Below the pieces are notes generated by a model. That model was not told where the DNA came from. It made no database searches and worked only from the letters and a program-made list of their open reading frames with translations. Both the position numbers and the translations under genes were made by a program. A stretch of DNA of 63,928 bases, the filler included, from Bigelowiella natans CCMP2755 (Eukaryota; Protista; Cercozoa), in assembly GCA_000320545.1 (NCBI GenBank). It is 5 parts of 5 records of this genome, joined end to end, with 100 filler letters (N's around TTAATTAATTAA, not from the genome) between each part and the next. Parts side by side here need not be neighbours in the genome. Positions count along the whole stretch, not along the records: positions 1 to 16,657 come from ADNK01003158.1; 4 more parts are not named here. One strand, 5' to 3'. Within the stretch, counting starts at the first letter, position 1; the number at the start of each line of letters is the position of its first letter. This document shows positions 4,844 through 5,735 of this stretch, piece by piece.

Positions 4844-5563
4844 TTCAATTTGGAATGCAGCATCTTCCATTGTGTTGCGTTGCGGAACATCATGTGCGAA
4901 TGCATGTTCAGACTCAAGATTTTTCAAAACAGCTATTTGTGCTCATTTGCACATTTGCGAGTAATGGACGGATGTGATGAAGTGATCAAATTTTTTCAAT
5001 GGTCAAATTCGTTTGTGCATGTGAATCTAGCGTTTGTGTGACTGACATTTGCATGATGTGAATGCATGGCATCGCTCGCGCCACATGAAACACAATGCAG
5101 AAGAGACAACTTCAGATGTGCAGCATGAGCGTTGCAGTCGCTCCCACCTTGAAGATGCGGAAGGTCAACCGGACCCAGTTGAGGTTCACTTTGGGGAAAA
5201 GCCAGAAAGGCAATGAGAACAATGAGAACGCATGGTGAAAAACTGCACTTCCAAAGTGTGACAAGACAAGACACTTGCAATGTGCAAAGTGCAGTGCCTC
5301 GAACTGGCTTCATTGAGGACTGACCAACAAACCAGCGGGGTTCATGCAAATTGGCACGAACTGAACACTGAATGCATCACAACTGGCAGCCAAGTGACGA
5401 CGACGCAAAGCATCCGCCCTGAGCAGGAACTTCCTGACAGCTGCGTCCACACGGAGATCAACGTCAGGGACAGCCGAGGAGGCTCCGAGCAAGACTCTGA
5501 TTTTGATGGAATCAGGGGCATGAAAAAACGAAGAGCAAGCAGGAGGTGCCGGGCCGAGAGCAC

Positions 5564-5735
5564 TTTTGGGGAAAAGGCAGTGGAAGTCATCCGGGACACT
5601 TTGCCCAGCTGGTGAGGGTGCGAGGGCACCTCGAGCACGTTCAATTCTCGAGTTGTGAAGGTGTTCCATTTTTTAGGGAAAAGGTAGTGGAAGTCATCCG
5701 GGACACTTTGCCCAGCTGGTGAGGGTGCGAGGGCA
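5564..5735. repeat. 65-bp direct repeat (5564-5628 and 5671-5735), period 107
   Basis: Copies are identical apart from two positions (G5568/A5675 and C5578/T5685). Confidence 0.95.

What the first reader, a model, noticed from the sequence alone, without database searches (positions are those of the whole stretch)
5031..5735. Candidate 'reverse-RIP' system: repeat DNA with TpA erased to TG/CA
Seen: I count zero TA dinucleotides in 5031-5673 (~640 bp, moderate GC), while genes and introns nearby contain TA freely and CpG is not depleted. The 65-bp duplication straddling the island edge differs at exactly two sites. Both are TA in the outer copy (5674-75, 5685-86) and TG or CA in the inner copy, i.e. 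the same A>G change in TpA context on opposite strands. Established: fungal RIP and 5mC decay drive C>T and RIP creates TA; this is the opposite direction. Inference: a repeat-targeted A:T>G:C mutator (DNA adenine deamination, a modified base, or error-prone repair at TpA) may act as genome defence. I know of no described pathway with this signature. Two copies alone cannot prove direction.
Basis: partly seen in the sequence, partly recalled or inferred. Interest (0 to 1): 0.92.

Follow-up and report, generated by a model that had tools for sequence, protein, structure and literature searches.

The report
Alga erases TA from repeated DNA
In the alga Bigelowiella natans, copies of a small jumping-DNA repeat, and the DNA beside them, have had nearly every TA letter pair changed to TG or CA; a 2026 preprint already reported this mutator for viral inserts, and this locus adds that it spares CTAG and seems to spread one way out of the repeat.

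Summary
In detail: no TA in 5030-5673 (35 expected), and the 65-bp duplicate differs only at two TA sites. Independent Illumina runs confirm the sequence. The genome is Bigelowiella natans. The island is centred on a ~350-bp dispersed non-coding repeat (5211-5561); all 30 copies fetched lie in TA-poor islands. Aligned copies give the direction. At three sites the states are TA 43, CA 23, TG 21 and CG 0, while CpG sites stay 92% intact, so this is TA>TG/CA on both strands, not RIP or 5mC decay. The signature is not undescribed: Mettrop et al. (bioRxiv 2026) measured it in mutation-accumulation lines at viral inserts and proposed an ADAT2-type DNA adenine deaminase. Not in that preprint's main text: (1) polarised proof in a small non-viral repeat; (2) CTAG largely escapes (53% of residual TA versus 5% in background); (3) a weaker A>G activity at ApT; (4) depletion reaches ~790 bp into unshared flank on one side but ~190 bp on the other, and at this locus a spliced RNA runs toward the long side. 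The enzyme remains unproven.

The parts
4748..5673 (.). Whole TpA-depleted island (3 TA in 926 bp; none in 5030-5673)
   Evidence: Two-state HMM; TA list
5211..5561 (-). Copy of a ~350-450 bp dispersed non-coding repeat; fixed end with short AACAATG-like tandem units at 5211, variable end at the other side; probably the tailed 3' end of a non-LTR/SINE-like element lying on the minus strand (class and strand are inferred)
   Evidence: 58 matches from 552 candidates of which 40 were scored, 78-93% identity for the main hits; alignment and ends; no tRNA, Rfam or unusual fold
4748..5210 (.). Long-side flank ('halo'): TA-depleted DNA with no long match elsewhere in the genome
   Evidence: Only a 39-68 bp piece matches elsewhere; TA only at 4934, 4962, 5028
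4967..5005 (-). 39-bp fragment shared with many loci, several lying about 1.2 kb downstream of the RT domain of a young retroelement family (ORF 1179 aa)
   Evidence: Coordinates compared (e.g. C515, C1853, C2494, C128)
5564..5628 (+). Inner copy of the local 65-bp duplication, with TG at 5567-68 and CA at 5578-79; begins at the truncated end of the repeat
5671..5735 (+). Outer copy of the duplication, keeps TA at 5674-75 and 5685-86; one further 90% match on contig C3257
5188..5206 (+). Third, partial copy of the start of the duplicated unit on the other side of the repeat (target-site-duplication-like), also in the TG/CA state
   Evidence: no comparable duplication found at the other 29 copies
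3288..5265 (-). Spliced, apparently non-coding RNA running from the repeat into the long-side flank, antisense to the RING-like ORF; introns 4381-4618 and 3487-3878 read GT-AG on the minus strand
   Evidence: Contigs of run X15, taken as RNA by the tool's guess and showing spliced joints; junctions checked, longest open stretch 128 aa
11402..12140 (.). Second TpA-depleted island, single-copy at BLAST sensitivity; 5 of the 7 TA between 11495 and 12052 are in CTAG

Best explanation
The island is the fossil footprint of the B. natans TpA hypermutator acting on a mobile-element copy. SHOWN here: a repeat family whose ancestor carried TA sites has lost them independently in many copies, only by transition (TA>TG or TA>CA), on both strands of the same copy, with CpG spared; CTAG is lost far more slowly; unshared flanking DNA is depleted too, more on the tail side. 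SHOWN by others: the same change arises de novo in DNA of vegetative lines at about 1000 times background in viral inserts. So it is a locus-targeted, DNA-level mutation process (probability about 0.92). INFERRED: the cell marks a locus (repeat or foreign DNA) through chromatin or its transcription rather than by homology pairing alone, and the mark spreads a few hundred bases (about 0.6). An adenine deaminase of the TadA/ADAT2 type with a 5'-T requirement converts A to inosine on either strand, and replication fixes G (about 0.55 among chemistries). A 3' G, probably with a C two bases upstream, slows the enzyme; in the palindrome CTAG both strands present the poor context, so it survives. Repeated rounds run until no TpA is left, damaging coding capacity and TA-containing signals of the invader.
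For: Three-state sites TA 43/CA 23/TG 21, CG 0, transversions 0; CpG-majority sites 334/362 intact; at least 8-13 independent changes per TA site on the tree against 0.35-0.93 for ordinary sites. All 30 copies lie in islands. Island rho TA 0.11, CA/TG 1.61 vs background 0.82 and 1.18. CTAG retention 1.15 vs 0.01-0.10 for the nine other contexts in non-redundant island DNA. The TA sites still segregating in the family are all CTA or TAG contexts. My hand tally of the preprint's Table S2: 23 of 226 TpA mutations have G 3' of the edited A, against 21.7% in host background. De novo measurement and ADAT2 candidate. Six CDA-fold deaminase loci in the genome. ADAT2 acting on DNA has a precedent in amphioxus (PMC10354150, title and abstract only). 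The 5'-T preference of TadA-derived editors is from my own knowledge.
Against: No enzyme is tied to the process; ADAT2/3 is universal, so its presence discriminates nothing. Sequence cannot tell a lesion on A from a lesion on T. The preprint's NCLDV target is transcriptionally silent, which sits badly with transcription-driven spreading. Flanks may be older, unrecognisably diverged repeats into which this element nested: two of three fragmentary copies found independently do not follow the one-sided pattern, and some long-side flanks hold degenerate family pieces. No new mutation was seen at this locus in three DNA runs (contigs hide rare variants). Alignment cells are not independent, so the p-values overstate.
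Confidence: 0.6

Rival explanations
1. Same targeted process, different chemistry: a modified base at TpA (oxidised thymine such as 5hmU/5fU pairing with G, or methylated adenine that is then deaminated) marks repeats and is mutagenic; CTAG lacks the mark or carries a protective one.
For: Sequence data are symmetric and fit a T lesion equally well. The secondary ApT activity (57 changes at 31 sites vs 60 at 105) could reflect a T- or 6mA-centred mark. An intronless full-length C5-methyltransferase ORF exists on C1391.
Against: No Tet/JBP or MT-A70 match in the genome, but these searches are exon-by-exon and rang in no control, so they prove little. Zero transversions at TA sites fits inosine well.
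Confidence: 0.22
2. Error-prone repair synthesis (Pol eta-like, WA hotspot) recruited to repeats or silent chromatin.
For: Pol eta makes A>G at TA and AA (own knowledge); acts at DNA level on both strands.
Against: No excess of A>G after a 5' A in the family (0.86 changes per site vs 1.04 after C); no AA-context event and no transversion among the 231 hot-region mutations.
Confidence: 0.07
3. RIP-like or 5mC-driven C>T decay, with TG/CA or CG as ancestor and TA derived.
For: A two-copy comparison alone allows it; one family site (TG 15/CA 12-13) could be either CG or TA decay; five C5-MTase matches exist.
Against: Sites holding both CA and TG need a TA or CG hub; CG is absent at the TA-bearing sites and CpG sites are stable. 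C>T at CpA would add TA, whereas islands have almost none. De novo mutations run TA>TG/CA.
Confidence: 0.02
4. RNA-level A-to-I editing of a retroelement transcript, fixed by reverse transcription.
For: The element looks like a retro-copy with a tail; ADAR and fungal Tad2/3 editing favour a 5' U (own knowledge); one ADAT1/ADAR-fold gene is present.
Against: Single copies carry both TG and CA products; unshared flanks and a single-copy island are depleted; the process was measured in non-mobile DNA.
Confidence: 0.03
5. Selection or composition: TA-poor elements survive or insert better, or GC-biased gene conversion; no special mutator.
For: The family's ancestor was already TA-poor; an already TA-free master would spread TA-free copies, so part of the core's depletion is inherited.
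Against: Many independent conversions at the same non-coding sites, strict dinucleotide context, depletion of unshared flanks, and direct measurement under relaxed selection.
Confidence: 0.03

Closest known systems
TpA hypermutation of viral inserts in Bigelowiella natans (Mettrop et al., bioRxiv 10.64898/2026.01.13.699255)
   Same: Same organism (91.4 Mb, 3,736 contigs; vs PMC12730881 Table 1), same TpA>TpG/CpA change on both strands, same TpA-poor and CpA/TpG-rich windows, same suggested link to transposons.
   Different: Target here is a short dispersed non-coding repeat plus its flanks and a single-copy island, not a viral insert; direction is shown from polarised copies; erasure is essentially complete. 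The words CTAG, flank, spread, context and SINE do not occur in the preprint's main text. Its Table S2 lists four hot-region T>C events with ATG/ATT context, matching the secondary ApT activity seen here, although the text says all fall on TpA.
Fungal repeat-induced point mutation (RIP)
   Same: Dinucleotide-specific transitions on both strands concentrated in repeats, with leakage into neighbouring unique DNA (own knowledge).
   Different: Opposite direction (RIP is C>T and creates TpA); RIP needs duplication and the sexual cycle, whereas this hits single-copy DNA and was measured in vegetative lines.
TadA/ADAT2-ADAT3 adenine deaminases, including DNA-editing amphioxus ADAT2 (PMC10354150)
   Same: A>I chemistry gives clean A>G; the natural tRNA target has U 5' of the edited A (own knowledge).
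   Different: No natural genome-wide, locus-targeted DNA role with this signature is established; no link to the B. natans enzyme was tested.
AID/APOBEC hypermutation of retroelements and viruses
   Same: Context-specific deamination used against invading DNA.
   Different: C>T/G>A, usually one strand, on replication intermediates.

Membership tests
B. natans TpA hypermutation (Mettrop et al. 2026) | Genome is Bigelowiella natans | tested here: met
   91,405,885 bases in 3,736 contigs equals the published 91.4 Mb/3,736 contigs; best named DJ-1 relatives are Lotharella and Amorphochlora; a large near-identical RT family fits the 150-copy LTR element of the preprint
B. natans TpA hypermutation (Mettrop et al. 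2026) | Only A>G and T>C transitions, at TpA, both strands | tested here: met
   TA 43, CA 23, TG 21, no CG, no transversion at three sites
B. natans TpA hypermutation (Mettrop et al. 2026) | Long-term footprint: rho TpA <= 0.43 with rho CpA+TpG >= 1.52 | tested here: met
   5031-5673: TA 0, CA 1.51, TG 1.69; pooled islands 0.11 and 1.61
B. natans TpA hypermutation (Mettrop et al. 2026) | Target is foreign or selfish DNA (virus, virophage, transposon) | tested here: inconclusive
   Core is a dispersed repeat with retro-copy-like ends, not viral; its class is not established; second island has no recognisable origin
B. natans TpA hypermutation (Mettrop et al. 2026) | Ongoing elevated mutation rate at the locus | tested here: inconclusive
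   No difference from the reference in three DNA runs, contigs only; few TA targets are left
Fungal RIP | C>T at CpA/TpG, raising TpA | tested here: not met
   TpA is lost; CA/TG-majority sites show TA in 25 of about 1,590 cells, about half of them at former TA sites
Fungal RIP | Needs duplicated sequence | tested here: not met
   Single-copy island and unshared flanks are depleted; preprint's NCLDV target is single copy
5mC (CpG) decay | CpG depletion with CG as hub state | tested here: not met
   CpG rho 0.77 vs 0.82; CpG sites 334/362 intact
ADAR-type editing of retro-RNA | One strand per copy, confined to the retro-copied part | tested here: not met
   Both products in single copies; flanks affected
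TadA/ADAT2-type DNA adenine deamination | Enzyme shown to deaminate A in DNA at 5'-TA | not testable with these tools
Non-LTR retroelement / SINE | Fixed tailed 3' end, variable 5' truncation, target-site duplication, Pol III or RT-derived body | tested here: inconclusive
   Fixed tandem-repeat end and variable other end present; TSD-like duplicate only at this copy; no tRNA or Rfam match

The most novel reading that the evidence does not exclude
B. natans runs a genome-wide 'reverse RIP' on its own transposon copies (roughly 5% of the genome), targeted without Argonaute/Piwi, spreading directionally along read-through transcription from each element into host DNA, and using an adenine-editing enzyme that is blocked specifically at CTAG, possibly by a protective base modification that marks that palindrome.
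Probability: 0.25. Interest if true: 0.9.

Novelty: new member of a known kind. Interest (0 to 1): 0.62.

Why it matters
A natural, locus-targeted A:T>G:C mutator of chromosomal DNA has one report in the literature I could search, a 2026 preprint, and no known enzyme. This locus shows it also works through small endogenous repeats and may have rewritten about 5% of the genome. The context hierarchy (other TA > CTA/TAG half-sites > CTAG, minor ApT activity) is an enzyme fingerprint that can be tested in vitro on candidate deaminases and in silico on the published mutation list. The one-sided halo gives a handle on how targets are chosen. A natural DNA adenine editor would also interest base-editing work.

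Tried and rejected
Assembly or sequencing artefact: rejected. Chance or local composition: rejected. RIP, CpG decay, RNA editing, GC-biased conversion and Pol eta: see rivals. My first column-wise consensus produced a false CG at one TG/CA site and inflated C>T rates; redone by dinucleotide state. First alignment mixed strands and was discarded. Literature searches for TpA, methylation, 6mA/AMT1 and RNAi in Bigelowiella gave nothing relevant beyond the preprint. The ChlorV virus paper has no CTAG motif. A metagenome scan with a 29-nt core pattern found nothing. One 20.8-kb Amorphochlora locus shows no island (too little to judge). Island ORFs gave no useful Pfam or outgroup homolog for amino-acid polarisation. 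Tet/JBP, MT-A70 and Piwi searches were blank (only Piwi had ringing controls). The spliced minus-strand model was not searched against any database; its three exon stretches were joined once inside a script only to count stop codons, and no joined sequence was printed or sent.

Full report
1. Observation. TA occurs at 5028-29 (inside CTAG) and next at 5674-75, leaving 5030-5673 free of it. Shuffles of that stretch give 35 TA on average and at least 18 in 10,000 trials. An order-4 Markov model trained on non-island DNA of the genome never gave a gap above 213 bp in 150 simulated windows. CA and TG are raised (1.51, 1.69). The duplication is 5564-5628 against 5671-5735, with TG and CA in the inner copy where the outer has TA. 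Contigs from three DNA runs match the reference without a difference and bridge the duplication. The depleted zone really spans about 4748-5673, and a second island lies at about 11402-12140.

2. Organism. The assembly has 91,405,885 bases in 3,736 contigs, the published figures for Bigelowiella natans (PMC12730881 Table 1). The DJ-1 gene in the window has its best named relatives in Lotharella and Amorphochlora.

3. Anatomy. The island is centred on a dispersed repeat at 5211-5561 (58 matches; 552 candidates, only 40 scored). All 30 fetched copies lie in TA-poor islands, with TA-free runs up to 1.8 kb. One end of the repeat is fixed and carries short tandem units; the other end is cut at variable points. 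That resembles the tailed 3' end of a non-LTR or SINE-like element on the minus strand, but only this copy has a TSD-like duplicate (5188-5206) and there is no tRNA, Rfam or folding signal, so the class is an inference. In two 100-kb samples, ten islands cover 5.2% and 8.4% of the DNA, about 5% after removing the two islands that led me to those contigs. Some islands hold pieces of this family, one has terminal inverted repeats, and several have no match in my sample.

4. Direction. Three family sites still have TA as the commonest state: TA 43, CA 23, TG 21, with no CG and no transversion. A site holding both CA and TG needs a TA or a CG hub. CG is absent there, and true CpG sites are stable (334 of 362 cells). 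CA/TG-majority sites show TA in 25 of about 1,590 cells, about half at former TA sites. On a tree built without these columns, the four most variable TA sites need 8-13 independent changes each, against 0.35-0.93 for ordinary sites other than ApT. Single copies carry both products, so both strands are hit in the chromosome.

5. Prior report. A bioRxiv preprint (10.64898/2026.01.13.699255) describes mutation-accumulation lines of B. natans in which an NCLDV insert and a virophage insert mutate about 1000 times faster than the rest of the genome, almost only TpA>TpG/CpA. It also finds TpA-poor windows and TpA-poor coding sequences enriched for reverse transcriptase and DDE domains, likens the process to RIP, and proposes an ADAT2 homologue. 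The signature is therefore known since 2026, with mechanism open.

6. What this locus adds. (a) CTAG escapes. In 38 kb of non-redundant island DNA, CTAG is as frequent as in background (ratio 1.15) while the nine other xTAy classes fall to 0.01-0.10. In the twelve islands of the two samples and the window, 46 of 87 remaining TA are in CTAG, against 5% in background. It is slow, not immune: half of the family's CTAG cells have converted. All TA sites still segregating in the family are CTA or TAG contexts. My hand tally of the preprint's Table S2 gives 23 of 226 TpA events with G 3' of the edited A, against 21.7% expected from host DNA; the viral regions' own composition was not available and the table gives only 3-mers, so this is consistent with the rule but does not test it. 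(b) A weaker A>G activity at ApT: 57 changes at 31 sites against 60 at 105 other A sites. Four hot-region events in Table S2 have ATG or ATT context. (c) A one-sided halo. Around the 30 oriented copies, non-CTAG TA per kb is 1.3 in the first 100 bp on the tail side, 6.7 at 300-400 bp, 24 at 600-700 bp and 49 at 900-1000 bp. On the other side it is 16 in the first 100 bp and 35 by 200-300 bp. Median reach is 792 against 190 bp (Wilcoxon p 2e-7), and the pattern holds in 16 loci whose flanks share nothing with the others. At this locus the long flank has no long match elsewhere in the genome, and an RNA contig runs from 5265 down to 3288 with two introns that read GT-AG on the minus strand, that is out of the repeat and through the halo. 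Against over-reading: one locus, unstranded contigs, two of three fragmentary copies do not fit, nesting in older repeats is not excluded, and the preprint's main target is silent. The preprint's main text contains none of the words CTAG, flank, spread, context or SINE.

7. Mechanism. A locus-targeted DNA-level mutator is close to certain (about 0.92). Targeting by a chromatin or transcription mark that spreads, rather than by homology pairing, is likely (about 0.6), since single-copy DNA is hit. For chemistry I favour adenine deamination by a TadA/ADAT2-type enzyme (about 0.55): clean transitions, strict 5'-T, and neighbour effects typical of an enzyme. A modified T or A is the main rival (about 0.22), because sequence cannot say which base carries the lesion. 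Pol eta-like synthesis lacks its AA component here. Six CDA-fold deaminase loci, one ADAT1/ADAR-fold gene and five C5-methyltransferase matches exist. Tet/JBP, MT-A70 and Piwi were not found, by an exon-wise search that is weak in this intron-rich genome.

8. Limits. The spliced model was not searched; its exons were joined once inside a script to count stops, and nothing joined was printed or sent. 

9. Verdict. Real, striking and correctly read as a reverse of RIP, but it is an instance of a system first reported in 2026. It extends that system to small endogenous repeats and supplies a context fingerprint and a spatial pattern that make the enzyme and the targeting testable. Novelty: new member of a known kind. 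Interest 0.62.

Noticed in passing
window 5988-6290 (+), continuing to about 7164: Expressed, spliced gene with an in-frame TGA in the motif QEIPG*GTC (RNA joints 6288-6374 and 6411-6742): a candidate selenoprotein with a UxxC-like thioredoxin-type site. No SECIS match in Rfam.
   Followed up: partly
window 3354-4421 (+): 355-aa ORF with a weak RING-finger match (best E 2e-4, below cut-off), overlapped by the antisense spliced RNA that comes out of the repeat.
   Followed up: partly
window 10348-11166 (+): Intronless DJ-1/PfpI gene with an N-terminal extension like a plastid-targeting leader; the second TA-poor island starts about 240 bp after its stop.
   Followed up: partly
window 2700-3350 and 7230-7600: Partly TA-depleted stretches rich in CTAG and GCTAGC units; 2700-3350 is single-copy by BLAST. 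May be young or partly converted islands.
   Followed up: partly
bioRxiv 10.64898/2026.01.13.699255 Table S2: Most de novo insertions in the mutation-accumulation lines end in CA/ACA or are TG units, and the one multi-base change is TGGC>AACA; suggests a CA-adding break-repair activity that may also feed the CA/TG richness of the genome.
   Followed up: no
G000, many contigs: At least about 110 RT matches with identical score, many in a 1659-aa open frame: a very young, high-copy retroelement that has escaped or is already immune to the mutator. Its TA content could not be read.
   Followed up: no
G000:C1391:110667-111599: Intronless full-length C5 DNA methyltransferase in a 649-aa frame, bacterial or viral in style; a candidate for any CTAG-linked mark.
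   Followed up: no
G000 whole genome: No Piwi-domain match although controls rang; if Argonaute is truly absent, small-RNA guidance as suggested in the preprint is unlikely.
   Followed up: partly
L045:1993-3252 (C1877:181993-183252): TA-free island bounded by 46-bp, 93% identical inverted repeats about 960 bp apart: a MITE or decayed DNA transposon hit by the same process.
   Followed up: partly
L049:2282-4071 (C1877:222282-224071): 1.8-kb island with only 3 TA, containing long tyrosine-free open frames, no repeat match in my sample; looks like a hypermutated single-copy gene.
   Followed up: partly
C3735:140649-150737 (L039-L040): Recent 3.4-kb and 1.3-kb tandem duplications at 99.8% identity that keep normal TA content: duplication alone has not triggered the mutator there, unlike RIP.
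   Followed up: no
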